Positions 23,450-49,650 of a stretch of 64,000 bases of DNA are shown piece by piece. Made by a program: the position numbers and the translations under genes. Positions within the stretch are counted from its first letter, which is position 1; every line of letters begins with the position of its first letter. The stretch covers positions 62,001-126,000 of IMG/VR virus record IMGVR_UViG_3300042891_000711. One strand, written 5' to 3'. The notes below the pieces were generated by a model. The model ran no database searches. It saw only the letters and a program-made list of their open reading frames with translations, and was not told the DNA's origin.

Positions 23450-25759
23450 ATGGCAATAAATTCCAATCCCGAAATTGAAGAAATCATTGCGGCTGCAACT
23501 GATCTCGCACGTGATTATAGGCACGAATATGTAACACTCGAGCATTTGTTAATTGCACTCGTTGAATTTAGATCATTTAAGAAGTTGTTAACTGATTATG
23601 GCATTGACACTACACCGCTATTAGCAGACTTATACGAATACACTGCTCAACAGGATCATCTTGTTGACTTGTCGGATAAAGAAATCGTTCCACAACGTAC
23701 ACATAGTTTAGAGCGTGTGTTTAATCGTGCATTTACACAGGTGTTGTTTACAGCACGTGAGCAAATGGAGCCAGTGGATTTATTTCTAAGCATCAGTCAA
23801 GAAACTAATAGTCATGCCGCTTACTTTATGCTTAAATGGGGTATTAACCGTAAAGATCTAGTAAAATATTATGCAGATAAATTTGTCGATGGTAAAGCAG
23901 TCAAGACTAAAGATCCAAAAGTCAAACAGGATTACTCTGATGCAATATTAGAAGAATACTGTACAAATCTAAATGCCGTTGCTACAGAAGGCAAAATTGA
24001 TCCAGTTATTGGCCGTGAATACGAATTAGAAGAAATTGCACAGGTATTAGCACGTCGTCATAAATCCAACGTGCTTATGATTGGTGATCCAGGTGTGGGT
24101 AAAACTGCTATTGCAGAAGGTCTAGCATATAAAATAGTCAACGGTGAAGTGCCAGAATACTTAAAACCCTACACAGTCTATAACTTAGAGATTGGTAGCT
24201 TACTAGCAGGTAGTAAATATCGCGGCGAGTTTGAAGAAAAACTTAAAGATGTACTTGAATCACTGAACACCAAAGGCAATTGTATCTTGTTTATCGACGA
24301 AGCACATCAAATGCAAGGTGCCGGCGCAGGTAGTTCAAGCAGTGTAGATTTTGCTAATATGCTAAAACCTGCACTGGCCAAAGGTGGTATTAAAGTTATT
24401 GCATCAACTACCTACGAAGAATACACACAGTCATTCGAAAAAGACCGTGCGCTAATGCGTCGTTTCTATAAACTAAACATTGACGAGCCTAGTCCAGAAG
24501 TTGCCAAAGATATTTTACTTGGGCTTAAAGGGCACTTTGAAAAGTTCCATAATGGTGTAATCTTAGAAGAAGCAATTGAACTAGCTGTCGACCTAAGTGT
24601 ACGTTATCAAACAGACAAACGCTTACCAGATAAAGCTATTGACCTAATCGACATGAGTTGCGCACGTCTTAAAATTAATAATCCAACTTGGGTAGTTAAT
24701 GGCGATGCAATTGTTGAAACACTAGCTAAAGCAACTAAGATTCCTAAAGAGAATTTTGACAGCAAACATGCATCAACATCATTACCAAGTTTAGAAAGCA
24801 ACATTAAAGATAAACTATACGGACAAGATACCGCAGTTGATGCAGTACTTGAAAAGATTTATGTTGCTAAGGCCGGATTGAAAGCACATAACAAACCAGT
24901 AGGTAACTTTTTATTCTTAGGCCCAACTGGTACAGGTAAGACAGAGTTAGCTAAATTGCTTAGTGAAAACTTAGGTATGAAGTTAATCCGCTTTGATATG
25001 AGTGAATACCAAGAGAAGCATGCTATGGCTAAACTTATCGGCGCTCCCCCGGGCTATGTTGGCTATGAAGATGGTAACTTAGGTGGCGGCTTGCTAATTA
25101 GCGAAGTTGAGCGTAACCCACATTCAATTATCTTACTAGATGAAATTGAAAAGGCTCACCCGGACATCAGTAACTTGTTACTACAGATTATGGACGAAGG
25201 TACTATTACTGGTAGTAACGGTAAGAAAGCGGATTGCCGCAATGCTATGCTAGTATTAACTAGTAACTTAGGTTCAGCAGACAACGAGCAAAACAACATT
25301 GGCTTTGGGCGTGACTTACAAAAATCAGGCGAAGATGATAGTGCTGTTAAAAAGTTCTTCAAACCAGAGTTCCGCAATCGTTTAGATGCAGTTGTTAAAT
25401 TCAACGGACTTGATAAGATTAGCATGAAGAAGATTGTTGTTAAATTCTTAAACGAGCTTAACGAATTGCTTGCAGAGAAACAAATTAAACTACGTTCAAC
25501 AGAAGCACTAGTTGACCACTTAGTTGAAGTTGGATTCGATCGAGCAATGGGCGCACGTCCACTATCACGTAAGATCAGCGAGTTAATCAAAGTGCCGTTG
25601 AGTAAGAAAATCTTGTTTGATAACATTGCCAGTGGCAGTAGTATTACCGCAGACTATGTCAACGATGCTGTAGATTTTATAGTAGTTGATCCAATCGATG
25701 ATATGATTCTATTAGAAAATAAAACAGTTGATGACGAAGGTTTTATTATAGTAGAATAA
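23450..25759 (+). CDS. clpA: ClpA-like AAA+ unfoldase
   Basis: Clp N-domain, GDPGVGKT and [26 protein letters not shown] loop. Confidence 0.93.
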
Positions 25760-26837: not shown

Positions 26838-27287
26838 ATGGAACAGGAATCATTAGACTTTTCAGTTACAGTTAGCGGAACATATTGGAGTAAAAAACCA
26901 CAGTTCTCTATCTGGCTCGATAATGCAGTTATCATGCAAACTGAAATTTCTAGTGAATCTCCACAAACTCACAAGTTCACTCATACAATAGATGAAGGTG
27001 AACATACTCTTAGAATTAAATTAGAAAATAAAACTGATTATGATACACTAGTTGTTAATGATCAAGTAAGTAAAGATATGTTACTTAACATTGACGATAT
27101 TACGATTGATGATATATCTCTTGGACAATTATTATGGTCTGAATCAATATTTCAACTAGATAAACCACATGAATATCAGGGTAAAGAAATAACCGAATTA
27201 GATAATTGTGTTAATCTTGGATGGAATGGTTCATATATGCTTAAATTTACCAGTCCTTATTATATTTGGCTCTTAGAAAAATTATAA
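26838..27287 (+). CDS. hypothetical protein
   Basis: ORF in operon. Confidence 0.7.
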   Translation: MEQESLDFSVTVSGTYWSKKPQFSIWLDNAVIMQTEISSESPQTHKFTHTIDEGEHTLRIKLENKTDYDTLVVNDQVSKDMLLNIDDITIDDISLGQLLWSESIFQLDKPHEYQGKEITELDNCVNLGWNGSYMLKFTSPYYIWLLEKL

Positions 27288-27317
27288 ACTAAATATAGTA
27301 ATAGCTACAGGATTACT

Positions 27318-28034
27318 ATGTTTTTATCGCAACTCTTTGAATCAACTACTCCTAAACATGCTGCCTTTTGCTTTGGCCGTATGAATCCACCTACCGTAGG
27401 TCACGGACAATTAATCAACACAGTAGCATCAGCTAGCCAAGGTGGCGATTATTTTGTATTTGTTAGTCAGACACAAGATAAGAAAAAGAATCCTCTAAAC
27501 TATGCTACTAAAGTTAAATTTGTTCAAGCATTATTCCCAGAACATGCAGGTCATGTTGTATATGATGCTAGTATAAAAACTATTATGGATGTTATTCATT
27601 GGTTGTATGCTAATGGATATCGTAATGTAACAATGGTTGCAGGCAGTGATCGTATCAGTAGCTTTCAAGACCTATTGCCTAAATACAATGGCGTGGAAGG
27701 TGTAAACGGTGCCTACTATAAGTTTGACAGTATCAACTTTGTCAGTAGTGGCGAGCGTGACCCTGATGCAGACGGTATAGCCGGTGTTAGTGCTAGTTCA
27801 GCACGTGAAGCTGCTAGTCAAGGTAATTTAGAAGCGTTTGCACAGGCCACAGGTGCAGGTAAACTAGCTGAACCATTGTATAATGCTGTACGTAAAGGCA
27901 TGTTGTTAGAGTGTAGTGGCTATATTCCAAAGAATAAGAAAGAAGCAAAAGATCCACGCTGGAGTAATTCTCTTACTGTAGATATTAAACCAGGTGCGAT
28001 TAACAAAAATCTCAAAGCATTACGGTTAATTTAA
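27318..28034 (+). CDS. cytidyltransferase-like (HxGH) nucleotidyltransferase with leader peptide
   Basis: FGRMNPPTVGH, KNPL, AGSDR, SAS; MFLSQLFE leader. Confidence 0.85.
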   Translation: MFLSQLFESTTPKHAAFCFGRMNPPTVGHGQLINTVASASQGGDYFVFVSQTQDKKKNPLNYATKVKFVQALFPEHAGHVVYDASIKTIMDVIHWLYANGYRNVTMVAGSDRISSFQDLLPKYNGVEGVNGAYYKFDSINFVSSGERDPDADGIAGVSASSAREAASQGNLEAFAQATGAGKLAEPLYNAVRKGMLLECSGYIPKNKKEAKDPRWSNSLTVDIKPGAINKNLKALRLI

Positions 28035-28035
28035 T

Positions 28036-28356
28036 ATGACCGCATTAAATCTCACAGTTGAAGTAAACTGTCATAGACCGGCTTGGTCGATCAATAAAAA
28101 TTATCCAACCGCATATAGAATTTACAATAATAATGATTTATTGACCGAACGTACATGGATGTGGAATAATAATACCGTTATTCGAGAAAATATATGGTTA
28201 TATACAGATACCAACGTATCAAATGTACTGACTATAACTCCTGTTGTTAATATTCAAGAACAGGCTGCATTTAATCTTAACAATTTTACAGTATTAAATC
28301 ATTCAGTTAGTGCCGAACAAATCAATGAACATACCATAAGTTTTATATTACAATAA
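28036..28356 (+). CDS. hypothetical protein
   Basis: ORF track. Confidence 0.6.
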   Translation: MTALNLTVEVNCHRPAWSINKNYPTAYRIYNNNDLLTERTWMWNNNTVIRENIWLYTDTNVSNVLTITPVVNIQEQAAFNLNNFTVLNHSVSAEQINEHTISFILQ

Positions 28357-28364
28357 ATACATAT

Positions 28365-28532
28365 ATGAAAATAACCGATATTATCAAACGACCAGACTTA
28401 ACCGAAGATGCAACAGGCGGAGCAACCAGCTCTGGCGCTATTGCCACTGTACCAGGTGTTGGAACAGGTCCTAAAGTGGGCACATTGTTTGGTGGTACGT
28501 ATAAACAACCTAAAAAGAGAAAAACAAAATGA
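28365..28532 (+). CDS. small leader-bearing protein (55 aa, not in ORF track)
   Basis: MKITDIIKRPDLTE-DATGGATSSGAIA...KKRKTK; TAAATA 5 nt upstream; ATGA overlap with next gene. Confidence 0.75.
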   Translation: MKITDIIKRPDLTEDATGGATSSGAIATVPGVGTGPKVGTLFGGTYKQPKKRKTK

Positions 28533-31500
28533 GTATGATGCGAAAACTATTAGAAGCTATGACTAAATTTGCTGGTGAACCTGAGCAAAAACCGGGTGAG
28601 CAATGGAAGGGTACGGACAAAGGTACTCCAGGTAAAAAACTAGTAGGTGATAGCATCATTAAAGATCTAGTCAAGGGTCCTACTCCAAAAACTAAAGAAG
28701 AAGAATTAGCAGAGGCATACGCTAACTTTATGGAAGATGACATTGGTGTAGAACCTAAACGTCCGGGTCGTAAGAGTGATCGTCCAGCTCGTGAATATAC
28801 TAAACATGGTAAGCCAAGTAAACGTTATACTACAGTTGAAGAAGGTTGGAACACAGGCAATAACCGTGTAAGTTTACCTGATACGCCACACACTTACTGG
28901 AGTGGTACTGGAGCATTACAAAAAGAATACGATGCCTTATACGATGCACTAGTACCAAGTCAAGGTAAAGCAGATACTATTGAAGGCGAAGTATTACGTG
29001 CGTCTAGTAAAATTGTTTATCGTCACTATAACGACGGTGATGAATTTAACGAGGCTAGTTTTGATCAATTAACACCATACATCGGTACAGTTACTGGCTA
29101 CGATGATCTAGCACATAAAGCTATAGAGTTTGCTCTTAAAGCCAATGGTAACTATACTCCAAACCCAGACTGGGATAGTTTAGACGTTATGGACTACGGT
29201 CCTGCGGAAGATGACTACGAAGATGAAGATGAAGAAGATGACGATAGCTGGGATCATGATGACGACGAAGATTTATTAGGAGAAGGTATGGAAGAATTTG
29301 CCAAATCTCAAGCTAAACAACGTGCTGAAAAAAGAAAATCAATTCCTTGGCCTAAAGAAGTTCCAACTGATGCTGAACAAGAGCGCGATCGCACTCGTGA
29401 CGAAGAAGAAAACGATCCACATCCGTATGCAGACACTCCGGACTTAGATGAAGGTGCTACTGACGTTTACTCAATAACATCAGAAAGAAATGGTAGAGAG
29501 CGTAGCAAGTCTGGAACATTGGCTGAACTTATTGAATACTATAGCTACACATTAGAAACTGGTAAATCATACGAACATGAACGTGGTAACAGAAAAATCA
29601 ATCTTAACCCAAAGAGTATTGAATCATTGGTACAAAATTTAAACAATGCTAAAGACAATGCTGCAGCCAATGGTAGTAGCAACGAACGCTTTTACGTAGA
29701 TCATAGCAATATGGCAGAAGGTCGTGGTCCTAGCAAAGGTCTACACAAAAAAGTTACTATCGTTAAAGGTCGTGATGCTGGTAAAACTGGATATGTTCGT
29801 CAGATCAAAACTGACAAGTTAAGAAATCGTGTATATCTTGACCTAGACTTAGAAGATGGTGGGCAAGCAGTAGTGCTTAAACAAGATGTACGTTTAGTAA
29901 AAGACCTAGCAGAAAACTACACTGGTCGTGAAACTAAAGACGGTGTTTGGCGTGTATTTAAAGATGGTCAAGGCGGAAGTGTTGCTGGTCCATTTAAATC
30001 AGCTGAAGAAGCCAATGCATGGATTAAAAAGCAAAATCAAGGTGTGGTGGAAGCACGTACTACGTGGAACAACGATTTCTATGTGTACGATCCAGAAACT
30101 AAAACAGTTAAAAAGAAATTTCGCACACACAGAGGTGCTAAACAGTACGCAGAAGCCAACGGTTTAGCAGTAGCAAGTGCTGAATACTATCATGATTCTG
30201 TTAGTAAAGAAGTAAATGAACATGGTGACCAAGAAGGTTACGAACCGTGGGGCTCACAAGATCTAAAACCAGGTCAAAAGGCTATTCAAGGTAAACCTGT
30301 AAAGGATACTAAAAAATTCACTAAAGATTTGGCTAAAGATTTAGGCAAACAATTTAGTCAAGAACCTAAAGTTAAGGAAGGTTGGGAAAGTGGTCCTGAA
30401 GAACGTACCAGAGTTGAACGTGATCCAGACGCTGAATATGATGCACGTCGTCAAGAGAAATTAGATGCGCCTTATGCTCAAAAAGAACCAGAAGCTAAAG
30501 GATATCACGTAGTTAGCCTCGATACACGTCAGCCAGTCACCGATAAAGTGTTTCCAACTAAAGGACACGCTATGGCCTATATCCAATCTAACTACGGTAA
30601 GAACTTAGCTTATCGTGCTATCAATGAAGGTATTGAAAGCGGTGATCCAGTTGAAAGTGCTGTACTAAGTGCAGTACAAGAACTTATTCAACAAGGACAT
30701 ACAGAAGTAGCACCAGAAGTTATTACTAATATGGTAGTAGCGGCTACAAGTCAACCATTCTTACTTAAAGATCTAGTTGATTGTAACAATAATAGCCCAG
30801 CTATTCAACACTATGTTGACAGTATCAATCCTACTAAAGTTAAATTCTCTAATGAAATTTTAACTGTTAAAAATGAAGATCCTGCAAAAGATAAAAAGCA
30901 AGCACAAGCCGGTGTAAGCAGTATGGCGGCACGTGCGGCTAGTCGCAATCGTCTAGGCGAAACTAAAGCAATATCAGAATTGTCTACTGATTTAGTTACT
31001 AAAGTAGGTACTGCCAGGGCTCAACAACTTGCTCCGCATGTAGCATCTAATAGCACAAGTCCCGACAGATTGAAGTTTGCTATTAAAAAGAATAAAGCTG
31101 TAGATAATTTATTAGCAAAATCAAGAGCGGCAAACGAAATAGGTGATACAGCATCGGCACAGCACGCAGTTGCTGGTGTACGAAAAATTAAAGATACAGT
31201 TGATGGGATTAGTGAAGGCAGTGAAACTCCGTTACGTGATACAGAAGATTATCGGGCCAAACGTAGTGCATTACAACAAATTCAAATGGACCTGGATACA
31301 CATAAAGATCCACAACTTAAAGCTGAATTAACACGTAGATTGGGCAGTTTAAATCAACAATATGCAGATTTACAAAGTAAGTTACGTGAATTTAAAGAGT
31401 CTCGTGGACATAAAGTTATTGCTACCAAGTTAGGTAATATGGATCGCATGAACAATGTTCAGATTCCTACACCAGCAGAACGTCAAGAACAAATACGCTT

Positions 31501-31837
31501 ACGTAAAGAAAAGGAAGCAGGTAAAAAGCCTGTTAAAGAGTTTGCAGTTCCTGGCGCGGCTACTGTAGCTACAGCAACACCAGGTGCTAAACCAGCTGAT
31601 CCGGCGGCTGTAGCCAAAGCGGCAGCGGCAACTAATACACTAAAAGCCGCAACAGGCACTACAGTTGCTCCAGCAACATTAGATAAAGCACTCGATTCAG
31701 CTACACAAGGTACAGCAACATCAACTGATGTAAAAGCCCTTGCTCCAATAATGGGCGTACTTAATAAAGCCGCTGCAGATCCTAAACTTGCAACACAGTT
31801 TAAAACTATAGCAAATCAAGCTAAACTAACACCATAA
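28529..31837 (+). CDS. modular polyprotein-like internal head protein
   Basis: Unrelated short modules joined at (I/L/V/M/F)-x-E sites. Confidence 0.65.
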   Translation: MSMMRKLLEAMTKFAGEPEQKPGEQWKGTDKGTPGKKLVGDSIIKDLVKGPTPKTKEEELAEAYANFMEDDIGVEPKRPGRKSDRPAREYTKHGKPSKRYTTVEEGWNTGNNRVSLPDTPHTYWSGTGALQKEYDALYDALVPSQGKADTIEGEVLRASSKIVYRHYNDGDEFNEASFDQLTPYIGTVTGYDDLAHKAIEFALKANGNYTPNPDWDSLDVMDYGPAEDDYEDEDEEDDDSWDHDDDEDLLGEGMEEFAKSQAKQRAEKRKSIPWPKEVPTDAEQERDRTRDEEENDPHPYADTPDLDEGATDVYSITSERNGRERSKSGTLAELIEYYSYTLETGKSYEHERGNRKINLNPKSIESLVQNLNNAKDNAAANGSSNERFYVDHSNMAEGRGPSKGLHKKVTIVKGRDAGKTGYVRQIKTDKLRNRVYLDLDLEDGGQAVVLKQDVRLVKDLAENYTGRETKDGVWRVFKDGQGGSVAGPFKSAEEANAWIKKQNQGVVEARTTWNNDFYVYDPETKTVKKKFRTHRGAKQYAEANGLAVASAEYYHDSVSKEVNEHGDQEGYEPWGSQDLKPGQKAIQGKPVKDTKKFTKDLAKDLGKQFSQEPKVKEGWESGPEERTRVERDPDAEYDARRQEKLDAPYAQKEPEAKGYHVVSLDTRQPVTDKVFPTKGHAMAYIQSNYGKNLAYRAINEGIESGDPVESAVLSAVQELIQQGHTEVAPEVITNMVVAATSQPFLLKDLVDCNNNSPAIQHYVDSINPTKVKFSNEILTVKNEDPAKDKKQAQAGVSSMAARAASRNRLGETKAISELSTDLVTKVGTARAQQLAPHVASNSTSPDRLKFAIKKNKAVDNLLAKSRAANEIGDTASAQHAVAGVRKIKDTVDGISEGSETPLRDTEDYRAKRSALQQIQMDLDTHKDPQLKAELTRRLGSLNQQYADLQSKLREFKESRGHKVIATKLGNMDRMNNVQIPTPAERQEQIRLRKEKEAGKKPVKEFAVPGAATVATATPGAKPADPAAVAKAAAATNTLKAATGTTVAPATLDKALDSATQGTATSTDVKALAPIMGVLNKAAADPKLATQFKTIANQAKLTP

Positions 31838-31838
31838 G

Positions 31839-31860
31839 ATTAAAGGGGCAACCCTTTAAT
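31839..31860. terminator. bidirectional hairpin between convergent genes
   Basis: ATTAAAGGG-GCAA-CCCTTTAAT, GNRA loop. Confidence 0.8.
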
Positions 31861-32302
31861 CGTCCAGTGCTTCTGGCTCTTGTCCGTCTGTTTGTAAATC
31901 CAAGTCTAATTTCTTTAGATACACTTTAACAGCCGACAGTTTACCAAACATACGGCTAGCACGTTTCTTATTAAGATACACACAGAACTTACCGGCTAGA
32001 TCTCGTTTAACTTCAGCTAAGGTATCACGTTTGAATCCAATGTTTGCTGTGTACACAGGCTCAATGTCAGCCATTGTGTCAAAGCCAAGTAATATACTAT
32101 CACCCTTGTTGCCCACCTTGACTAACTTAGTATCAAAGTATCCACTACTATTTGCTCGACGCATGATTATAGCCGCTAACTTAACATTGTTCTCAGCTAC
32201 TTGTATTGTACCGTCGGCGTCAATCCAGTAATCCTCGCCTTCATATGGTCCGTTAATTGGATCACCGATAATTTCATTTAATAGTTCTGCTACTTGTGTC
32301 AT
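31856..32302 (-). CDS. hypothetical early protein
   Basis: ORF with own sigma70 promoter. Confidence 0.7.
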   Translation of the reverse strand: MTQVAELLNEIIGDPINGPYEGEDYWIDADGTIQVAENNVKLAAIIMRRANSSGYFDTKLVKVGNKGDSILLGFDTMADIEPVYTANIGFKRDTLAEVKRDLAGKFCVYLNKKRASRMFGKLSAVKVYLKKLDLDLQTDGQEPEALDD

Positions 32303-32336
32303 TGAGTTTACTCATAGGTTGATTAAAGACATAGCT

Positions 32337-32365
32337 ATTATACTATCTTTTGCTAATAAAGTCAA
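32337..32365 (-). promoter_or_regulatory. sigma70-type early promoter
   Basis: On minus strand TTGACT-17 bp-TATAAT. Confidence 0.85.
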
Positions 32366-32435
32366 GTCTTTTTATAAGTTTTACTTAGAATTAAATTAGC
32401 ATAAATATCTTATATGAGTCAGTCTGAGAACAAAT

Positions 32436-33128
32436 ATGAGAATATATGATTTAAATCCCGTAGTTAACGAAGATAATGAAATGTCAGATGTCATTACTGC
32501 TCGCGGACTAGTAAATAGAGCATTAGATAATCCCGCTGCACGTCAGGAATACTTTGATTACATGACGCATCTGCGTAATAAACACGGTAAAGAATACAGC
32601 ACACGTATACATCAAAAAGCCACATCATTTGCTAAATCAGTAGACGAAACAATTAAAAAAGTAGGCAGCCAATACGAACTTGTTAGTAAATCGGGTAAGA
32701 ACCTAGGCAAGTATCCTACTAGAGCTGGTGCTGAGAAACGTGAGCAACAGGTTAATTATTTTAAACACGTTAAAGAAGATGCGTGGACTGGTGAAAATCC
32801 ACCGTGGCATAACGGTAATGATCAATGGAATGATGGTACTGACCAATGGCATAGTGCAGATGATGGTGCAGGTAGCAGTGCTGCAACTCCATCATCTGCA
32901 GGTCCGCTAACTGGTGAGATACCAGTTAAAGAAGAGTTTAATGCACAAGATGTTGTTAGTGTTGATGTTCCACTATTAATACGCTTACTTGAATATGCTC
33001 GCGAAGATGCTAAAACAGACATGGATTTACACACAGTAGCTGAACGATTAATTGATCTCAGTCAAGAAGGCGTTACACTAACAATGCAAGATTACGACAC
33101 AATTTGCAACACCAAGGAAACTGATTAA
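32436..33128 (+). CDS. modular putative internal head protein
   Basis: MRIYDLNPVVNE leader; modules after VDE, VKE, VKE. Confidence 0.65.
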   Translation: MRIYDLNPVVNEDNEMSDVITARGLVNRALDNPAARQEYFDYMTHLRNKHGKEYSTRIHQKATSFAKSVDETIKKVGSQYELVSKSGKNLGKYPTRAGAEKREQQVNYFKHVKEDAWTGENPPWHNGNDQWNDGTDQWHSADDGAGSSAATPSSAGPLTGEIPVKEEFNAQDVVSVDVPLLIRLLEYAREDAKTDMDLHTVAERLIDLSQEGVTLTMQDYDTICNTKETD

Positions 33129-35911
33129 TGAGTCTTATAAGTCAAACCAATTCATACACTACACCCGGAACATATACATACACTATTCCTCAAGGAGTAG
33201 GGTCGCTTGAATTTCATATATGGGGTGCAGGTGGAGCTGCAGGTGCATCTGGACCAGCTATTCAGGTACAAAGTGGCACGACTACAGCTCGAATACCAAG
33301 TGGTTCAGAACAAGTTCAAAGTGGAACGACTCGAGTTGAATCTGGTGTAGCACAAATACAAACTGGAACAACACAGGTACAAACTGGCACAACACAAGAA
33401 GCCTATACAGTTACTACTACTTGTTTTCTTGGTAATGCATTAATAAGCACACCATCCGGTCTTGTTGCTATCGAATCGCTGGCAATCGGTGATTTGGTGT
33501 ATGGGTTCGATGCATATAGCGAAACGGGTGAAGTAGTCTATGATGCAGAATTAGTAACATCACCAGTGACTAAATTGTTTAAACATACCTGGGAAGAAGC
33601 TGATGAATTTTCGTATTTGTTAGTAATTACACACGAACAAGGTGTATTAACTGTAACAGGCGGACACGAAATATTAACATCATCAAGAAAAGACACAACC
33701 TGTTATGATGGTTTCGTACGTGCAGAAAATTTAAGAGTAGGCGATGTACTTTATACTGAAGACGGTACTGCTTCTGTAATACAAAACATTATCCGTGGTG
33801 GCGAATATGAGATGGTATACAATCTTGAAATTGATGGTGTACACACATACGTTGCTGATGGCATTCGTGTTCATAATGGTATTATTAATAATAACAATAC
33901 TACCAACACCAAAGGACAATCTACTACTAATACCAAATTCAATAAAGGAACAACAACAAAAACATTGTATCGAGATGTTCCAGTATACGCAACTGTTCCT
34001 GTGTACACTACTGTACCAACTTATAGTGATGTTCCGACATATACTACACAAACTACATTTACTACAGTATATAATCCTGTATATGAATCAGTTTCCGGCG
34101 GTAGTGGTGCCAGCGGTGGGGCAGGCGGTTATGCATCGAGAAAAATCCAAGTTACTGCTGGCGATGTAATCGTAATTTCAGTTGGTAGTGCAGGAGTTGG
34201 ATCCATAGGTGGACAAAGTTCGTCATCAATTGGTTTCAACGGCGGCAATGGCGGAGTATCATCAAACGGTGGACGTGGAGGCGGTGGCGGTGCTGCCACC
34301 GTGATTACTGTAAATGGAACTATTGTTGCAGTTGCCGCAGGCGGCGCCGGTGGTGGCGGTGGCGGAACATCTGGATCGGCAGGTACTGCGGGAACAGCTG
34401 CATCCATTTCAGGAATTGGATCAGGTACACAAGGTGCCGGTCTATCGTCGGTTGCTGGTCCAGCAACAGGTGGCGGAGGCGGTGGTGGTTTTTATAGCGG
34501 ACTTGCTGGTGCAAGCGGTAATGCCGGCGGAGGTGGACAAGGCGGAGTAAGTTTCGGCACAGTAATTTATGGTGGTAGCGGAACAACTCCTGGAGGCAAC
34601 AACATATCAGTTTATCCAGGAAGAAATGTTGGTGCTGCAGCATTTGGTGGTGCAGCTTTATTAATATTCAATAAATCATTTAATATAAATGTAAAACGTG
34701 CTGGAACTTGGAATCCAGTTAACAGTGCCTGGGTTAAAGTCGGTGGTTCATGGAAAGAACTATTAAATGGATGGACTAAAGTTAGTGGTGTATGGAAACC
34801 ATTGATTTCTGCAGATGCTGTAGTTGGTTCTGAAAATTTAACAACTCCTGCTATAACATATTCGTTATCTGCAGATTCAGCAAGTATTACCGAAGGTGAT
34901 TCAGTGGTATTTACACTAGCAACCACAGGTATTGCCGCAGGTACATCGATTCCGTATACTGCTACAGGTATTGCGGCAGCCGATTTATCAGCCGGCGCAT
35001 TAACAGGCAATTTTATTGTTGGCACAACCGATACTATCACATTTACTCCTAGAGAGAATAATACCACAAATGGTACCAGAACATTACGTGTATCTATTGA
35101 TAATTCTACTGCGGCTGCAACTTGTACAGTATTAGACACATCATTGACTCCAGTGTATTCACTTGTCGGCAATGTTGCAACAATAAACGAGGGTGGATCA
35201 GTTACATTTACTTTATCAACTAGTTATGTTGATTCAGGCACAGTAATTCCATATTCAGTTAGTGGCATTAGTGCTGCAGACTTATCATCTGGATCGATGA
35301 CTGGCAATTTTATAGTCGGAAATGTAACCACTGCAGCATTTACTTTAGCATCAGATTCACTCACAGAAGGTGCTGAACGAATAACTATTACCTTACACAG
35401 TGTACCAGGAAGTGCAAGTTGCGCTATAGCTGATACATCGACTACACCTTATGTAGCATTTAGTGGCTCAATTACATTAAGTGGTAATGGTACATGGACT
35501 GTGCCAGATTATGTAACTTCGTTATCTGTTTCAGTAATAGGCGGTGGCGGCGGTGGTGGTGGCAACCACAACAATTGTGGTAACCGAGCACATGCTGGTG
35601 GTGCTGGTGGCGGTGGTTATACAAATTCAGACACACTATCAGTTTCCCCAGGACAAAAATTTACATATCGAGTAGGTGTCGGTGGAGCAGGTGGTGCGGC
35701 TAGTGCATTAGGTGGTACTGGTGTATCTACATTCTTTGGTTCAGTTTCGGCCGCTGGCGGCGGTGGTGGTGGTGGTGGTACGAAAGGCACGGCGGGTGTC
35801 GGTGGAGCAGGCACCAATGGTGGTATAGGCGGCTTATATACAGATAACTTAGGTAAAGCAGGTGGTAGTGGATCCATTAGTCTTTCTTGGACAGGATCAA
35901 GACCAGGATAA
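33128..35911 (+). CDS. glycine-rich tail fibre/adhesin with inserted Hint domain and Calx-beta/Ig-like repeats
   Basis: WGAGG/GGGGG glycine-rich domains, SITEGDSVVFTL repeats, Hint motifs. Confidence 0.8.
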   Translation: MSLISQTNSYTTPGTYTYTIPQGVGSLEFHIWGAGGAAGASGPAIQVQSGTTTARIPSGSEQVQSGTTRVESGVAQIQTGTTQVQTGTTQEAYTVTTTCFLGNALISTPSGLVAIESLAIGDLVYGFDAYSETGEVVYDAELVTSPVTKLFKHTWEEADEFSYLLVITHEQGVLTVTGGHEILTSSRKDTTCYDGFVRAENLRVGDVLYTEDGTASVIQNIIRGGEYEMVYNLEIDGVHTYVADGIRVHNGIINNNNTTNTKGQSTTNTKFNKGTTTKTLYRDVPVYATVPVYTTVPTYSDVPTYTTQTTFTTVYNPVYESVSGGSGASGGAGGYASRKIQVTAGDVIVISVGSAGVGSIGGQSSSSIGFNGGNGGVSSNGGRGGGGGAATVITVNGTIVAVAAGGAGGGGGGTSGSAGTAGTAASISGIGSGTQGAGLSSVAGPATGGGGGGGFYSGLAGASGNAGGGGQGGVSFGTVIYGGSGTTPGGNNISVYPGRNVGAAAFGGAALLIFNKSFNINVKRAGTWNPVNSAWVKVGGSWKELLNGWTKVSGVWKPLISADAVVGSENLTTPAITYSLSADSASITEGDSVVFTLATTGIAAGTSIPYTATGIAAADLSAGALTGNFIVGTTDTITFTPRENNTTNGTRTLRVSIDNSTAAATCTVLDTSLTPVYSLVGNVATINEGGSVTFTLSTSYVDSGTVIPYSVSGISAADLSSGSMTGNFIVGNVTTAAFTLASDSLTEGAERITITLHSVPGSASCAIADTSTTPYVAFSGSITLSGNGTWTVPDYVTSLSVSVIGGGGGGGGNHNNCGNRAHAGGAGGGGYTNSDTLSVSPGQKFTYRVGVGGAGGAASALGGTGVSTFFGSVSAAGGGGGGGGTKGTAGVGGAGTNGGIGGLYTDNLGKAGGSGSISLSWTGSRPG
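33422..33877 (+). other. Hint (intein-like/BIL) domain
   Basis: CFLGNALI (block A), LTVTGGHEI (block B), VYNLEIDGVHTYVADGIRVHN (blocks F/G); +1 residue is Gly. Confidence 0.88.
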
Positions 35912-46422: not shown

Positions 46423-49400
46423 ATGCGATATAGTCAAATTAAACAAGCCTTAAAAGAAGCAGAGATCATTGATGAAGTATCAATGAGTCCTTCCAGCCTA
46501 GAAGCGTTCGCTAACAGTCCGGAAGCTGATGGTATGCTTATGGGTATTGAATTTGAAATGTGCGTACCCAATGCCAGCTCAGGTGACTATGAGCCTGAGT
46601 GGGAATACGATTACGAATACAACGAAAGCGCCTACAATATTGATGATATTCTTAACTTCTTCCGCAACGGTGATTTCAGTAACATGAGTCGTAGTGACTC
46701 TGAGCGTTATCGTAGTGAACTATATGACGAATACCTAGACTGGACTAATGAAGCATCTAATCGCTATATAGACGATAACGTAGATGAATTAGACAGCCTT
46801 ATCCGAGATCAACTTGAAGGCGAAATTGATCGTGATGATGTCAAAGATGCGGCACGTACTCGCTGGATAGAAGCAAACCCTGACGAAGATCCCGACAGTG
46901 ACGATGCTGATGCAGAAATTCGTGTCATAACATTAGAAATGATCGAAGATCGAGTAGATGAATTAATGGCAGATACCAGCGGTAGAGAGTATCAATATGC
47001 CTACGACCAAGCACGTCAAGAAATGGAAGATGACTTCCGTAACGGTGGTGATGGCGATGAAGGTGCTTGGTTAAGCGACATTGGCATTGGTGATATGCAG
47101 GACGCTGAACGTCATTGGGGCTTTGATTGGCCTCACATGTATGACGCTAACGAAGGCAATGATGGTGGTGATGCAGACATAGATCAAGTAGCAGATGACT
47201 TTTATGGTGCTACTGGATATGAAGCACGCGGGTTTAGTAATTACCACAGTGGCAATCGTAGTCAGCAACAACAAGAAGGTTACTTTATTATTGAACCCGA
47301 TGCTTCAATTGATGCTGAACAAGGTGATGCAGGCTTAGAGTTTATCAGTCCAGCTATGCCACTTAAAGATGGCTTGACTATGTTGAAAAAAGTTAAACAA
47401 TGGGCTAAGTTGGCAGGTTGTTATACTAACAAATCAACGGGCCTACACATGAACATCAGTGTGCCTAACATGACCACTGATAATCTAGACTATGTTAAAC
47501 TAGCATTATTCCTAGGTGACGAATACGTACTTCAAGAGTTTGGTCGTCAGTACAATACCTATGCTAAAAGTGCCATGAAGATTGTTAAAGAAAAGATTCA
47601 GGCCAATCCAGAAAACGCCACAGAATTGTTGGCCAAGATGAAAGAACATCTTGGAGCGGCAGCTAGTAAACTAGTACACAGTGGCGTTACACAAAAGTAT
47701 ACAAGTATCAATACCAAAGGCAACTACGTAGAATTCCGTGGTCCAGGTGGTGATTATCTAAACGAAGACATACCTAAACTTGTTAATACTGCTCTACGCC
47801 TAGCACAAAGCCTACGTATTGCCACAGACGAGTCAGCATACAAACAAGAATACGCTAAGAAATTATACAAACTAATCAGCCCAGAAGGCGAGTGGACTGA
47901 TCCTAATAACTCAGTAGCATTGTTCAGTCGCTATGCTCTAGGACAGATCAACAAATCAGAATTAGTAAGTAATGTTCGTCAAGCACAAACAGCTCGTAAA
48001 GAGAAGAAAGGCGAAGAAGTACAGTACTGGGTAATGAATAAAGATGGCACTGGTGGTAAGCAAATGGTATTTGCCGCTAGTGAAACAGCCGCTATCATCC
48101 TAGGCGGTAAACAAATGGGCATGAACCGTGAACAAAGTATCAGCAAACTTAAAGCTGAATTGTTTGTAGATACTAACAAAGAAAATACACCGCCAGCATC
48201 AGTACCACTTAGTTGGATTGATTGGATAACAGATACACTACCTACGGTTACTGTAGATACAGCAAATTCTGTAAGAGAAAGAATAAAAGATGGCAGAGAT
48301 AATTTAGATGCAGATGCCAATGGTTGGATAGTTAGACAGATTGACAACGAACTACGCAGTAGAATGGATCAAGGAGTAGTCGACGGCAATGAAACACGCT
48401 GGAAGGTTTATTTTGCTCGTGGTAGACATGTAGATCAAGACCCGGTATTCGTCGATGCTGATAGTCCTCGTCAGGCTAAACTTAAAGCCGCAGATATATT
48501 CATGCGAGAGCAACGGATATCAGTGGGCCTACACGATTTAGAAGCCATTGCTACCACACAAGATGCTGGCCGTCCAGAAGTAACTTGGAATATTATAAAC
48601 GGTCTAGGTGAACCTGCTGGTACTGTTAACGCAAGAACCAGTGACGAAGCACTACATGTATACGGTAGTGTTAATAATGTCGATACTAGATACTATAGAG
48701 CAACACCAGTTGAAACAACGCCAAGTGCAGGCACGTACACTAGTTTCGCAGATGCGCAGGCTGCGGCAGATAGAGCAAACGCTGGTAATACCACTAACAG
48801 AGAAGTGTTTGACGGTTTAGCCAATAACTGGCAAGAGTGGCTTCAGGGTGTTGGTAGACATACCGACGGTAATCTACAGCGTATACTTGATAATATGGCC
48901 CAGGGTGTTAATGCTCACTATACCAACTTAACTCTTGACGAGAAAGACTTTATTATTAATACTGTTAATCAAGAAATACGCCGCCGTAGTAGTAATAACG
49001 AATTAGCTGCCAACGCAGGTGGTGCCGAAAACGCAGTGCGTGATAGTTTGCCCCAAGCACATCGTGAGTGGTTAGACAATGTAGCCGATAAGAGTGACAT
49101 GGATCTAATCAACGTATTCCGTAATGTCAGCACAACCGCAGTATTAAATGATCAACAGACTGCTTACTTTAGAGTTATTATTAAACGTGAACTACGTCGT
49201 CGTGGTATCAGCGACAGTGAGCGCGATGCTAGCGAACAAGGCGCAACTCCAGTACCTAATTATGAGATATATGCGCCAGACAGCGGAGTAGTAGTACACC
49301 AATTCCACGCCGACAACGAAACAGACGCAAATAGAAAGTTCAGTGAATTTGAACAGAATTACGAATCAGATTACGATTTCCATCACGAGTATCGCAGAAT

Positions 49401-49650
49401 TGGCCCTGCACAACAGGAATTACCATTGGAACCCGCAGTGCCACAGACCACTGCTACAGATTTTGAAGTAGTTAAAGCTGATGGTAGTGTGGTGTCAAAC
49501 ATACGAGGTGCTGATATGGTCTATGCTCATCGTAAAGCACGTGAATTAGAACAAGACCTGGGCTTAGAAAGTGGTGCGTTAACAGTTAGAGCATTACCAA
49601 CAACAAACGAATCTATAAAACAATTACGCCGATTGGCAGGATTAGTATAA
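46423..49650 (+). CDS. putative amidoligase (COOH-NH2 ligase) multidomain protein
   Basis: GIEFEM, IEPDASI, GLEFISP, TNKSTGLHMNIS, KYTSIN, VEFRGPGG; leader ending LKE; C-terminal LRRLAGLV. Confidence 0.82.
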   Translation: MRYSQIKQALKEAEIIDEVSMSPSSLEAFANSPEADGMLMGIEFEMCVPNASSGDYEPEWEYDYEYNESAYNIDDILNFFRNGDFSNMSRSDSERYRSELYDEYLDWTNEASNRYIDDNVDELDSLIRDQLEGEIDRDDVKDAARTRWIEANPDEDPDSDDADAEIRVITLEMIEDRVDELMADTSGREYQYAYDQARQEMEDDFRNGGDGDEGAWLSDIGIGDMQDAERHWGFDWPHMYDANEGNDGGDADIDQVADDFYGATGYEARGFSNYHSGNRSQQQQEGYFIIEPDASIDAEQGDAGLEFISPAMPLKDGLTMLKKVKQWAKLAGCYTNKSTGLHMNISVPNMTTDNLDYVKLALFLGDEYVLQEFGRQYNTYAKSAMKIVKEKIQANPENATELLAKMKEHLGAAASKLVHSGVTQKYTSINTKGNYVEFRGPGGDYLNEDIPKLVNTALRLAQSLRIATDESAYKQEYAKKLYKLISPEGEWTDPNNSVALFSRYALGQINKSELVSNVRQAQTARKEKKGEEVQYWVMNKDGTGGKQMVFAASETAAIILGGKQMGMNREQSISKLKAELFVDTNKENTPPASVPLSWIDWITDTLPTVTVDTANSVRERIKDGRDNLDADANGWIVRQIDNELRSRMDQGVVDGNETRWKVYFARGRHVDQDPVFVDADSPRQAKLKAADIFMREQRISVGLHDLEAIATTQDAGRPEVTWNIINGLGEPAGTVNARTSDEALHVYGSVNNVDTRYYRATPVETTPSAGTYTSFADAQAAADRANAGNTTNREVFDGLANNWQEWLQGVGRHTDGNLQRILDNMAQGVNAHYTNLTLDEKDFIINTVNQEIRRRSSNNELAANAGGAENAVRDSLPQAHREWLDNVADKSDMDLINVFRNVSTTAVLNDQQTAYFRVIIKRELRRRGISDSERDASEQGATPVPNYEIYAPDSGVVVHQFHADNETDANRKFSEFEQNYESDYDFHHEYRRIGPAQQELPLEPAVPQTTATDFEVVKADGSVVSNIRGADMVYAHRKARELEQDLGLESGALTVRALPTTNESIKQLRRLAGLV

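What the first reader, a model, noticed from the sequence alone, without database searches (positions are those of the whole stretch)
28529..31837. 1102-aa 'string of beads' polyprotein punctuated by prohead-protease-like sites
Seen: unrelated 30-140 aa modules joined at VEE/G, LGE/G, LDE/G, MAE/G, LAE/N, VVE/A, VNE/H, VKE/G, INE/G, ISE/L, ISE/G, FKE/S, VKE/F. One module is KOW/SH3-like (VTIVKGRDAGKTGYVRQI). Established: T4 gp21 cleaves after Glu in (I/L/V)-x-E. Inference: one ORF releases a dozen or more small proteins inside the head, an expandable cargo cassette that could gain modules by recombination.
Basis: partly seen in the sequence, partly recalled or inferred. Interest (0 to 1): 0.78.

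Follow-up and report, generated by a model that had tools for sequence, protein, structure and literature searches.

The report
Expandable phage polyprotein with protease-site joints
A lake-water jumbo phage related to T4 encodes one 1102-residue protein built from about 14 unrelated small modules, each joint carrying the cutting motif of the phage's own head protease, and related phages add, drop and reshuffle whole modules exactly at those joints, which points to one gene loading many small proteins into the virus head, although the cutting itself has not been shown.

Summary
The ORF is real: window 28529..31837, + strand, 1102 aa. The plain motif count is not above chance: [ILVMF]-x-E occurs 23 times against 17±3.6 in shuffles. 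The sharper motif h-x-E followed by G/A/S is enriched, 13 against 4.7±2.1.

The decisive evidence is comparative. About 1,190 representative relatives exist in metagenomes. Whole modules are gained, lost, reordered and moved between two genes. In 181 distinct joints where a different, non-homologous module lies upstream, Glu is at P1 in 88% and h-x-E sits exactly at the joint in 77% (background 2.3%).

Lake-water assemblies hold variants lacking exactly module E (46 aa), G (53 aa) or J (85 aa). A fixed frame of short leader, N-terminal modules and C-terminal module brackets cargo, giving proteins of 215 to 1435 aa.

The genome encodes a T4-type prohead protease (Peptidase_S77). A near-identical relative's capsid protein has the same motif in its propeptide.

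ISE/L and VKE/F are not, and LGE/T at residue 811 was missed.

Cleavage and head location remain inferred. I rate it a new variant of T4 internal-protein loading, interest about 0.75.

The parts
28529..28555 (+). Leader, residues 1-9 (MSMMRKLLE), ending in L-L-E before Ala. Candidate capsid-targeting propeptide. The true start could be Met3 or Met4.
   Evidence: The leader is conserved as M(D)M[KR]KLLE in dozens of relatives. 125 of 157 family proteins have h-x-E within their first 22 aa, against 35% of random windows.
28556..28843 (+). N-terminal frame modules N1 (residues 10-62) and N2 (63-105). N2 ends VEE before G.
   Evidence: N-terminal in 78 of 79 family proteins that have them. N2 is followed by more than 30 different downstream modules.
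28844..29284 (+). Module A, residues 106-252 (GWNTG...): a compact helical domain of about 120 aa plus a 24-aa acidic disordered tail ending LGE before G.
   Evidence: AF2 on alignment A3 gives pLDDT 83.7, with residues 5-123 above 90 and the tail 124-147 below 50. It has about 25 distinct upstream contexts, nearly all ending in h-x-E. It occurs as a stand-alone ORF in Pseudoalteromonas phage XG4 and in a 484-kb uncultured phage. No solved-structure match.
29285..29452 (+). Module B, residues 253-308 (GMEEFAK...), ends LDE before G.
   Evidence: Absent from L009, where A joins D directly at VDE/G.
29453..29719 (+). Module C, residues 309-397 (GATDVYSITSERNG...), alpha/beta, ends MAE before G.
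   Evidence: Folded in the AF2 model, residues 327-380. Exists as stand-alone 93-122-aa proteins both with and without a leader: P0143, P0145, P0150, P0146.
29720..29914 (+). Module D, residues 398-462, basic beta-barrel (KOW/SH3-like), ends LAE before N.
   Evidence: Pfam KOW E=0.039, below cut-off. AF2 shows strands 408-460. Best PDB matches, all weak, are uL24m, Spt5 and eS4.
29915..30052 (+). Module E, residues 463-508 (NYTGRETKDGVW...), three strands plus a helix, ends VVE before A.
   Evidence: A natural variant lacks exactly 46 codons here: joint 29904 to 30050 with 7 nt between.
30053..30220 (+). Module F, residues 509-564 (ARTTWNNDFYVY...), beta-beta-alpha, ends VNE before H.
30221..30379 (+). 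Module G, residues 565-617 (HGDQEGYEPWG...), ends VKE before G. Present in this phage, absent from close relatives.
   Evidence: Missing in L002, L003, L005 and L006. Joint 30214 to 30377 with GAA between, a net loss of 53 codons, is seen in all four runs laid.
30380..30628 (+). Module H, residues 618-700 (GWESGPEE...), ends INE before G.
   Evidence: 40 distinct upstream 8-mers, every one ending in Glu. Homology also breaks at residues 659-669 without an h-x-E, which is unexplained.
30629..30961 (+).
   Evidence: Alignment A4 has 44 sequences and 34 invariant columns. Folded in AF2, residues 702-768. It is the first module after the alternative leader MRAKQF..E in L007, L009 and G007. More than 35 different downstream contexts follow RLGE.
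30962..31216 (+). Module J, residues 812-896 (TKAISELSTD...), helical hairpin, ends ISE before G.
   Evidence: Absent from L003, L005 and L006. A natural variant skips exactly 255 nt, 85 codons: joint 30956 to 31212.
31217..31399 (+). Module K, residues 897-957 (GSETPLRD...), helical, ends FKE before S.
31400..31837 (+). C-terminal frame module Z, residues 958-1102, basic (pI 10.1), Ala/Thr/Lys-rich, helical. Includes the stop codon.
   Evidence: C-terminal in 76 of 76 family proteins that have it. pI. Helices.
28365..28532 (+). 55-aa upstream ORF overlapping the polyprotein start by ATGA. It has a leader-like N-terminus (MKITDIIKRPDLTE) and a basic tail. Possibly co-translated, role unknown.
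   Evidence: 96-98% identical in L002, L003, L006 and L010, and always adjacent to the polyprotein gene.

Best explanation
The gene encodes a polyprotein precursor of internal head proteins in a freshwater T4-like jumbo phage.

Anatomy. A 9-residue leader ending in L-L-E, two conserved N-terminal modules (N1, N2) and a conserved basic C-terminal module (Z) form a fixed frame. Eleven unrelated small modules of 5-16.5 kDa lie between N2 and Z. Each joint reads [V/L/I]-x-E followed by a small residue, mostly Gly or Ser.

Proposed mechanism (inferred).
1. The leader and N-terminal part take the whole chain into the assembling prohead core, as T4 capsid-targeting sequences do.
2. The phage's T4-type serine prohead protease (Peptidase_S77) cuts after each joint Glu.
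3. This frees about 14 small proteins inside the head in equal numbers from a single targeting signal.
4. Some fragments probably stay with the DNA and enter the host, as T4 IPI, IPII, IPIII and Alt do. This last step is the most speculative.

Evolution (shown). Because each joint is a self-contained cleavage site, any module can be inserted, deleted or moved without harming its neighbours. That is what the family does.
For: **Shown**
- The ORF is intact, and h-x-E-[GAS] is enriched: 13 against 4.7±2.1, the top z-score among 98 large ORFs of the contig.
- The family is large: 1186 representative proteins at E<=1e-3. Their matched stretches begin and end at the module edges.
- Of 181 distinct joints with a non-homologous upstream neighbour, 88% have Glu at P1 and 77% have h-x-E exactly at the joint, against a 2.3% background. 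P3 is V 53, L 44, I 30.
- In an analysis that did not use the query's sites, sharp homology breakpoints (identity at least 75%) lie within 3 aa of an h-x-E in 45-64% of cases, against 15% at random.
- Architectures differ by whole modules: L002 lacks G, L003 lacks G and J, L006 has an extra 67-aa block. L005, L007, L009 and G007 split the cargo into a second gene with its own leader and a different order, for example I-J-A-B-C-D.
- Contigs from lake-water libraries hold variants lacking exactly E (46 aa), G (53 aa) or J (85 aa).
- The frame is fixed: N1N2 is N-terminal in 78/79 and Z is C-terminal in 76/76. Complete proteins run from 215 to 1435 aa, and site number correlates with length at r=0.92.
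- Modules also occur as stand-alone small proteins.
- Peptidase_S77 is present in this contig. It is also present in the complete 329-kb relative G006, in G007, and in both outside phages that carry module A.
- In a relative with 97% portal identity (L028), the Gp23-family capsid protein has LLE/G, LLE/G, ILE/N and LTE/N in the 53 residues before the Pfam Gp23 match. The small core proteins there begin MNLLE and MNKYEQLIE.
- Ten of the 12 inter-module joints lie in low-confidence segments of the AF2 model, whereas most non-joint h-x-E motifs lie inside predicted helices. Module A folds as a domain spanning residues 5-123, with a disordered tail that carries the site.
- Distant members (P0107, P0101) sit among gp13, sheath and terminase genes.

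**Established knowledge**
- T4 gp21 cleaves after Glu in L/I-x-E, and 10-19-residue N-terminal propeptides target internal proteins to the head (PMC9026906).
Against: - No proteomic or biochemical evidence shows that the protein is cut, or that it is in virions.
- There is no cultured relative: tblastn against 50,697 phage records finds only module A.
- The plain motif count is not significant.
- The gene lies about 122 kb from the head-morphogenesis cluster.
- P3 is most often Val, whereas T4 has Leu/Ile.
- About 12% of heterologous joints lack Glu at the extrapolated position.
- Homology also breaks at residues 659-669 without a motif.
- Joints 462 and 957 are not in low-confidence regions of the model.
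- No module has a recognised function, so 'cargo that acts in the host' is conjecture.
Confidence: 0.7

Rival explanations
1. Sacrificial prohead core or filler protein. The chain is cut at the same sites by the same protease, but the fragments are expelled from the head, as with T4 gp22, gp67 and gp68. On this view the protein serves assembly or head-size control rather than delivery, and the modules have no function after cleavage.
For: T4 core proteins are cut into multiple fragments that mostly leave the head (PMC9026906). Several modules end in long acidic, disordered tails, like the acidic 260-266-aa core protein beside the protease.
Against: - The head cluster already has its own scaffold (366 aa) and small core proteins.
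- The modules are conserved folded domains with invariant residues.
- They exist as stand-alone genes elsewhere.
- Their presence varies within natural populations, which fits accessory functions better than an assembly-critical scaffold.
Confidence: 0.12
2. An uncut multidomain ('polyvalent'-type) protein. On this view h-x-E-G is only a favoured helix-end or linker motif at domain borders, conserved because it makes good linkers, and the protein acts as one long chain.
For: No cleavage data exist. Multidomain phage proteins with 2-15 domains are known (PMC5512222). P1' Gly/Ser and a preceding acidic stretch are also common features of linkers.
Against: - The motif equals the known specificity class of the co-encoded protease.
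- It also ends the N-terminal leaders, at residues 5-14 in most family members, and recurs in the capsid-protein propeptide. A linker rule does not explain either.
- P1 Glu is kept in 88% of joints whose upstream module is unrelated.
- When Glu is lost at the aligned position, a new h-x-E often appears 2-4 residues later, for example VKADE/GWG and VKDVEE/GWESG.
Confidence: 0.1
3. A polyprotein processed outside the head by another glutamyl-specific protease, phage or host, releasing cytoplasmic early proteins rather than head cargo.
For: The gene lies among non-structural genes: a ClpA/B-like ATPase, a glycosyltransferase-like ORF and a cytidylyltransferase-like ORF. No T4 late-promoter motif is nearby.
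Against: - No other protease candidate was seen near the gene.
- The S77 protease is the only enzyme in the clade known to have this specificity.
- The leader resembles capsid-targeting propeptides.
- Distant members lie inside virion and packaging gene clusters.
Confidence: 0.05

Closest known systems
T4 internal proteins IPI, IPII, IPIII and Alt, with their capsid-targeting sequences, processed by gp21 (PMC9026906)
   Same: - A short N-terminal propeptide ending in hydrophobic-x-Glu.
- A co-encoded Peptidase_S77 prohead protease.
- Small products of about 5-20 kDa, some of them basic.
- Genes located away from the head-morphogenesis cluster.
- Highly variable cargo between related phages.
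   Different: - T4 has one cargo per gene, each with its own targeting sequence. Here one leader precedes about 14 cargo modules joined by internal cleavage motifs.
- Variation is by shuffling of modules inside one ORF.
- There is no sequence similarity to the T4 proteins.
- Cleavage and packaging are not shown.
Multi-site processing of head and ejection proteins in phiKZ-like giant phages (SPN3US gp245; PMC10052503, PMC5694885)
   Same: A related protease cuts after Glu at a three-residue motif. Several motifs occur in one substrate, and many proteins are packaged with the DNA.
   Different: - There the extra cuts chop a long N-terminal propeptide, leaving one mature C-terminal protein. Here every segment looks like an independent conserved domain.
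- The motif there is A/S/G-x-E, not V/L/I-x-E.
- It is a different phage lineage.
Polyvalent proteins of phages and conjugative elements (Iyer et al. 2017, PMC5512222)
   Same: Many unrelated domains in a single polypeptide of a phage. They are thought to be packaged and delivered with the DNA, and processing into separate domains has been proposed, by analogy with RNA-virus polyproteins.
   Different: - Polyvalent proteins are defined by recognisable conflict-related enzymatic domains and often carry their own peptidase domain.
- This protein has no recognisable domain and no peptidase.
- Its joints carry the motif of a protease encoded elsewhere in the genome.
- It has a fixed N- and C-terminal frame.
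T4 prohead core proteins gp22, gp67 and gp68
   Same: Cut at several L/I-x-E sites by gp21, and rich in acidic stretches.
   Different: Those genes sit next to the protease gene and their fragments are mostly expelled. This gene is about 122 kb away, and the clade has separate scaffold and core genes.

Membership tests
T4-type capsid-targeted internal head proteins (prohead-protease substrates) | Genome encodes a T4-type prohead protease (Peptidase_S77) | tested here: met
   PF03420 matches at G000:C1:218560-218901 with E=1.3e-20, cut off by the contig end. The full 213-aa ortholog is in L028. The family is also present in G006, G007 and both outside phages that carry module A.
T4-type capsid-targeted internal head proteins (prohead-protease substrates) | Short N-terminal propeptide (about 7-20 aa) ending in hydrophobic-x-Glu | tested here: met
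   MSMMRKLLE followed by A. 125 of 157 family proteins have the motif in their first 22 aa, against 35% of random windows. This is a sequence-level test only.
T4-type capsid-targeted internal head proteins (prohead-protease substrates) | Cleaved after Glu by the prohead protease | not testable with these tools
   Needs virion proteomics or an in vitro cleavage assay.
T4-type capsid-targeted internal head proteins (prohead-protease substrates) | Present inside proheads and virions | not testable with these tools
   There is no cultured member of the clade. The only data are metagenomes and metatranscriptome libraries.
T4-type capsid-targeted internal head proteins (prohead-protease substrates) | Sequence homology to T4 IPI, IPII, IPIII or Alt | tested here: not met
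   No Pfam or PHROG family reaches significance.
Polyvalent proteins (Iyer et al. 2017) | Many unrelated domains in one phage polypeptide | tested here: met
   About 14 modules with no internal similarity.
Polyvalent proteins (Iyer et al. 2017) | Recognisable conflict-related enzymatic or anti-restriction domains | tested here: not met
   Pfam finds only sub-threshold KOW in this protein and nothing significant in seven large relatives.
Polyvalent proteins (Iyer et al. 2017) | Embedded peptidase domain for self-processing | tested here: not met
   No peptidase family matches in the protein.
Prohead scaffold or core proteins (T4 gp22/gp67/gp68 type) | Gene adjacent to the portal, protease and capsid genes | tested here: not met
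   The polyprotein is at C1:90529-93837 and the portal at C1:215762-217129. Separate core and scaffold genes exist.
Prohead scaffold or core proteins (T4 gp22/gp67/gp68 type) | Several protease motifs along the chain | tested here: met
KOW / SH3-like barrel (module D only) | Match to the KOW profile above its curated threshold | tested here: inconclusive
   14.2 bits against a 22.3-bit cut-off in this protein; 16.2 bits in P0005. The AF2 model shows a beta-barrel, and the best Foldseek matches are KOW proteins, but at E=5e-3 to 8e-2.

The most novel reading that the evidence does not exclude
T4-like jumbo phages of lakes use single-leader polyproteins as plug-and-play loaders. One targeting signal and the head protease package an arbitrary, rapidly changing set of small effector proteins in equal numbers. 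These are delivered with the DNA to counter host defences or take over the cell. The protease-site joints make the gene an evolvable cassette whose content differs between co-occurring strains. This would be a general, previously unrecognised way for DNA phages to diversify injected cargo.
Probability: 0.35. Interest if true: 0.85.

Novelty: new variant of a known kind. Interest (0 to 1): 0.75.

Why it matters
Packaging of proteins into T4 heads by a short targeting peptide, followed by protease release, is a classic mechanism. It is known only as one cargo per gene.

Here the comparative record shows a whole family, about 1,190 representative clusters, in which the protease motif appears to serve as a universal connector. 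Cargo modules can then be strung together, swapped and lost without redesigning anything else.

If cleavage is confirmed, three things follow:
- It explains how large phages can carry many small internal proteins at fixed ratios.
- It supplies a catalogue of dozens of orphan small domains that are prime candidates for injected anti-defence or take-over factors.
- It offers a natural design rule for multi-cargo protein delivery with engineered T4-type capsids.

It also gives a sequence-only way to predict the specificity of uncultured phage head proteases: [V/L/I]-x-E followed by G or S.

Tried and rejected
- **Family scans of the whole protein.** Pfam and PHROGs found only sub-threshold KOW and DUF7491. 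Pfam on seven large relatives found nothing significant.
- **DNA and protein searches of 50,697 phage records.** The only hits were a low-complexity acidic stretch and module A.
- **Paralogs in the own contig.** None found by phmmer over all ORFs or by the genome search.
- **Raw all-against-all HSP ends.** Only 1.6-2-fold enriched near motifs, because ends fade with divergence. This was replaced by high-identity sharp breakpoints and module-anchored joints.
- **MAFFT alignment of 141 fragments to the full protein (A1).** Most fragments were misplaced. It was rebuilt as A2 from the rows that aligned well.
- **Clustering of non-query segments to count module families.** Single linkage merged multi-module segments, so no reliable count was obtained.
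- **T4 late promoter TATAAATA.** Three matches against 10.8 expected, none near the gene, so not informative for this clade.
- **ESM Atlas look-alikes for modules A, I and C.** Only unnamed viral clusters, all scores below 0.8.
- **Profile searches of modules A and I against PDB sequences.** Nothing.
- **Fold searches of module A.** No solved-structure match: Foldseek E>=2.7, VIA Z<=4.4. The only matches were uncharacterised AFDB and BFVD proteins.
- **Peptidase_S77 in five short relative contigs.** No match, but these are 7-40% fragments lacking the head region, so this is uninformative.
- **DNA at the joints.** Only GAAGGT recurs, in 6 of 14 joints. That is too short to argue for a recombination signal.


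Full report
**What is there**

Window 28529..31837 (+) is an uninterrupted 1102-aa ORF of 121.7 kDa. The window is bases 62001-126000 of a 218.9-kb IMG/VR viral contig estimated to be 62% complete. The phage has a T4-like family B DNA polymerase, nearest to Sinorhizobium phage Phosso and Agrobacterium phage Atu_ph07 at 46-51% identity. It has a T4-type portal. At the very end of the contig lies a T4-type prohead protease, Peptidase_S77. The sequence is found in at least 20 lake-water metagenome runs and in freshwater metatranscriptome libraries. A complete relative of 329 kb with terminal repeats (G006) also exists. This is therefore a freshwater T4-like jumbo phage. It may belong to the aquatic lineage described in PMC12619734, whose core genes include ClpA and a prohead core protease. 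That paper does not mention a polyprotein.

**Is the motif pattern more than chance?**

[ILVMF]-x-E occurs 23 times against 17.0±3.6 in shuffles, because the protein is rich in Glu. With a small residue at P1' the pattern is real. h-x-E-[GAS] occurs 13 times against 4.7±2.1 (P=6e-4), and h-x-E-G 7 times against 1.4. This ORF ranks first among the 98 large ORFs of the contig. Motifs followed by a bulky hydrophobic residue are not enriched. In the structure model those mostly sit inside helices of folded modules.

**The comparative evidence**

A HMMER scan of 1.84 billion representative proteins found 1186 relatives at E<=1e-3. They range from 93 to 1595 aa, and their matched stretches start and stop at recurring query positions: 4-105, 102-249, 306-397, 394-463, 461-511, 560-669, 612-708, 696-812 and 896-1100. 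Nine IMG/VR loci include close relatives.

Using the joints as borders I named the parts as follows:

| Part | Residues |
|---|---|
| Leader | 1-9 |
| N1 | 10-62 |
| N2 | 63-105 |
| A | 106-252 |
| B | 253-308 |
| C | 309-397 |
| D | 398-462 |
| E | 463-508 |
| F | 509-564 |
| G | 565-617 |
| H | 618-700 |
| I | 701-811 |
| J | 812-896 |
| K | 897-957 |
| Z | 958-1102 |

The syntenic orthologs differ by whole parts:
- L002 lacks G.
- L003 lacks G and J.
- L006 lacks G and J and has an extra 67-aa block after A.
- L010 has an extra block of about 107 aa between N2 and A.
- The complete genome G006 has N1-N2-x-C-x-F-I-x-K-Z, 960 aa.

In L005, L007, L009 and G007 the orthologous site holds only a short gene of 222-302 aa with the frame N1-N2-(x)-Z. 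The cargo sits about 6 kb downstream in a second gene with a different short leader, MRFGEIKKQLAE or MRAKQFTRKVYE. Its order also differs: I-J-A-B-C-D in L007, I-A-D-E-F-H in L009, and I-G-x in G007.

The junctions are exact. Module A (GWNTG...) is preceded by TTVEE, KKQLAE, DGISE, ESVSE or SRFNE in five different contexts.

**Statistics of the joints**

Across the 150 best representatives plus the loci, module H (GWESG...) has 40 distinct upstream 8-mers, and every one ends in Glu.

Pooling all modules, there are 181 distinct joints whose upstream 10 residues are not homologous to the query's:
- Glu is at P1 in 159 (88%).
- h-x-E sits exactly at the joint in 139 (77%). A random position does so 2.3% of the time.
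- P3 is V 53, L 44, I 30, T 10, M 7, F 7.
- P1' is G 105, S 38. P1' belongs to the conserved downstream module, so it is not independent evidence.

A test that does not use the query's sites gives the same direction. Sharp ends of high-identity local alignments lie within 3 aa of an h-x-E in 45% (starts) to 64% (ends) of cases, against 15% at random.

Where Glu is lost at the aligned position, a new motif often appears a few residues on, for example VKADE/GWG and VKDVEE/GWESG.

**Natural populations**

I laid contigs of three metatranscriptome libraries and one DNA library from lakes on window 27300-32400. Three joints appeared:

| Joint | Detail | Net loss | Runs | Matching module |
|---|---|---|---|---|
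| 30214 to 30377 | GAA between | 159 nt = 53 codons | all four | G (53 aa) |
| 29904 to 30050 | 7 nt between | 138 nt = 46 codons | X23 | E (46 aa) |
| 30956 to 31212 | clean skip | 255 nt = 85 codons | X21, X22 | J (85 aa) |

Presence or absence of single modules is therefore a standing polymorphism. Coverage in RNA libraries is consistent with expression but does not prove it.

**The frame**

N1N2 is N-terminal in 78 of 79 proteins that have it. Z is C-terminal in 76 of 76. The 62 proteins with both ends range almost continuously from 215 to 1435 aa. The number of h-x-E-[small] sites rises with length at r=0.92, roughly one per 80 aa.

Modules also occur alone. Module C exists as 93-122-aa proteins with a leader (P0146) or without one (P0143, P0145, P0150). 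Module I occurs with the leaders MRARDF...LRE or MKISE. Module A's core is a stand-alone ORF in Pseudoalteromonas phage XG4 and in a 484-kb uncultured phage. Both encode Peptidase_S77. In XG4 that ORF and its upstream neighbour share the N-terminus MMILFDIIESSN, much as T4 IPII and IPIII share one targeting sequence.

**Link to the protease**

T4 gp21 cuts after Glu in L/I-x-E, and 10-19-residue N-terminal propeptides target the internal proteins to the prohead core (PMC9026906).

This protein begins MSMMRKLLE followed by A. Of the family proteins, 125 of 157 have h-x-E within their first 22 residues, against 35% of random windows. The leaders fall into a few families: M(D)M[KR]KLLE, MRAKQF..K..E, and MDL[KR]NLLGKLDLIE.

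In L028, whose portal is 97% identical, the head cluster reads as follows:
- portal;
- a 74-aa protein beginning MNLLE;
- an acidic 266-aa protein beginning MNKYEQLIE;
- the 213-aa protease;
- a 366-aa scaffold rich in the motif;
- a Gp23-family capsid protein. Its first 53 residues, ahead of the Pfam match, contain LLE/G, LLE/G, ILE/N and LTE/N.

The motif at the polyprotein joints is therefore the one seen where this clade's protease is expected to act.

**Structure**

AlphaFold2 on the whole protein (alignment A2, 63 rows) gave a mean pLDDT of 54.8, with confident blocks inside modules:
- C: 327-380
- D plus E: 406-503, where D is a beta-barrel
- F: 516-550
- I: 702-768
- J: 853-891
- K and Z: 899-996 and 1024-1097

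Ten of the 12 inter-module joints (105, 252, 308, 397, 508, 564, 617, 700, 811, 896) lie in segments with pLDDT below 50. Such segments make up 48% of the chain. Low confidence partly reflects shallow alignment.

Module A predicted alone from 35 sequences is confident: pLDDT 83.7, residues 5-123 above 90. Its 24-residue acidic tail carrying the site is disordered. So the domain begins a few residues after one joint and ends a flexible tail before the next.

Fold searches:
- The whole model's best PDB matches, all weak, are uL24m, Spt5, eS4, Tudor and eIF5A.
- Module A has no solved-structure counterpart. It matches only uncharacterised proteins.

**Interpretation**

Shown: the ORF, the motif enrichment, the module borders, the fixed frame, gain, loss and shuffling at the joints, the co-encoded S77 protease, and the same motif in leaders and in the capsid-protein propeptide.

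Inferred: that the protease cuts these joints, that this happens inside the prohead, and that the leader and N-terminal part act as the targeting signal.

More speculative: that the fragments stay in the head and act in the host.

I put 0.7 on the cleaved head-polyprotein model. The rivals are:
- same cleavage, but fragments discarded as core filler (0.12);
- not cleaved at all (0.10);
- cleaved elsewhere by another enzyme (0.05).

**Comparison with what is known**

It works like T4's CTS-plus-gp21 loading of internal proteins, but with many cargoes behind one leader and internal release sites. phiKZ-like phages show several cuts in one substrate, but those cuts trim a propeptide from a single mature protein. 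Polyvalent proteins share the many-domains-in-one-chain idea and a proposed processing step, but they are defined by recognisable enzymatic domains and embedded peptidases, which are absent here. Searches of the held literature found no description of such a T4-type polyprotein. I therefore rate it a new variant of a known kind.

Noticed in passing
window 28365-28532 (+): A 55-aa ORF overlaps the polyprotein start by ATGA. It reads MKITDIIKRPDLTE, then a Gly/Thr-rich stretch, then a basic tail KKRKTK. It is 96-98% identical in four relatives and always adjacent to the polyprotein gene. It could be a co-translated small head peptide with its own leader-like start.
   Followed up: partly
window 32436-33128 (+): A 230-aa ORF, syntenic with the polyprotein, starts MRIYDLNPVVNE. 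It has further h-x-E motifs (VDE/T, VKE/D, VKE/E) between short conserved blocks. It may be a second, smaller protein of the same kind. No Pfam family matches.
   Followed up: partly
window 23450-25759 (+): A 769-aa ClpA/ClpB-type double AAA+ ATPase (Clp_N, AAA, AAA_2, ClpB_D2-small) lies five genes upstream and is conserved in synteny at 77-98% identity. No partner peptidase was seen nearby.
   Followed up: partly
window 33128-35911 (+): A 927-aa glycine-rich protein carries a Hint / pretoxin-HINT domain at residues about 96-253 and a Gly_rich_2 domain at its C-terminal end. The region between residues about 93 and 477 is replaced or absent in relatives, so the Hint insert looks mobile.
   Followed up: partly
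window 60545-61726 (+): A phage-encoded sulfate permease family (SulP) protein: PF00916, E=5e-49, covering nearly the whole profile. This is an unusual auxiliary transporter gene for a phage.
   Followed up: no
window 46423-49650 (+): A 1075-aa ORF with an Amidoligase_2 domain (residues 277-459). The rest of the protein has no family match.
   Followed up: no
window 26838-27284 and 27318-28034 (+): A CBM60-like carbohydrate-binding ORF (149 aa) and a weak cytidylyltransferase-like ORF (238 aa) lie just upstream, next to a 275-aa ORF with no Pfam match that looks like a glycosyltransferase by eye only.
   Followed up: no
whole window: The T4 late-promoter octamer TATAAATA is depleted: 3 matches against 10.8±2.7 expected. 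This clade probably does not use the T4 late-promoter sequence.
   Followed up: partly
polyprotein residues 659-669 (window about 30503-30535): Several relatives lose homology inside module H, after GWESGPEE...RRQEK, at a place without an h-x-E motif. The first 40 or so residues of H may be a separate, widely reused charged adapter. This is unexplained.
   Followed up: partly
L011 3096-4230 (G000:C1 about 217357-218491, outside the window): Between the portal and protease genes lie a 74-aa ORF starting MNLLE and a very acidic 260-aa ORF starting MNKYEQLIE. These are likely counterparts of the T4 prohead core proteins, with leader-like starts.
   Followed up: partly
L101 2432-3510 (Pseudoalteromonas phage vB_Psh_XG4, PP712099.1): Two adjacent ORFs (157 and 193 aa) share the N-terminal 12 residues MMILFDIIESSN, which end in I-I-E. 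The second ORF carries the module A core. The record is unannotated and the phage encodes Peptidase_S77. It is a cultured system in which head targeting of this module could be tested.
   Followed up: partly
L103 and L105 (contigs encoding P0107 and P0101): Distant family members of 1071, 778 and 1595 aa lie among neck gp13, tail sheath and large terminase genes of another T4-like lineage. One variant of module A there is followed by a CxxC...CxxC zinc-ribbon-like insert.
   Followed up: partly
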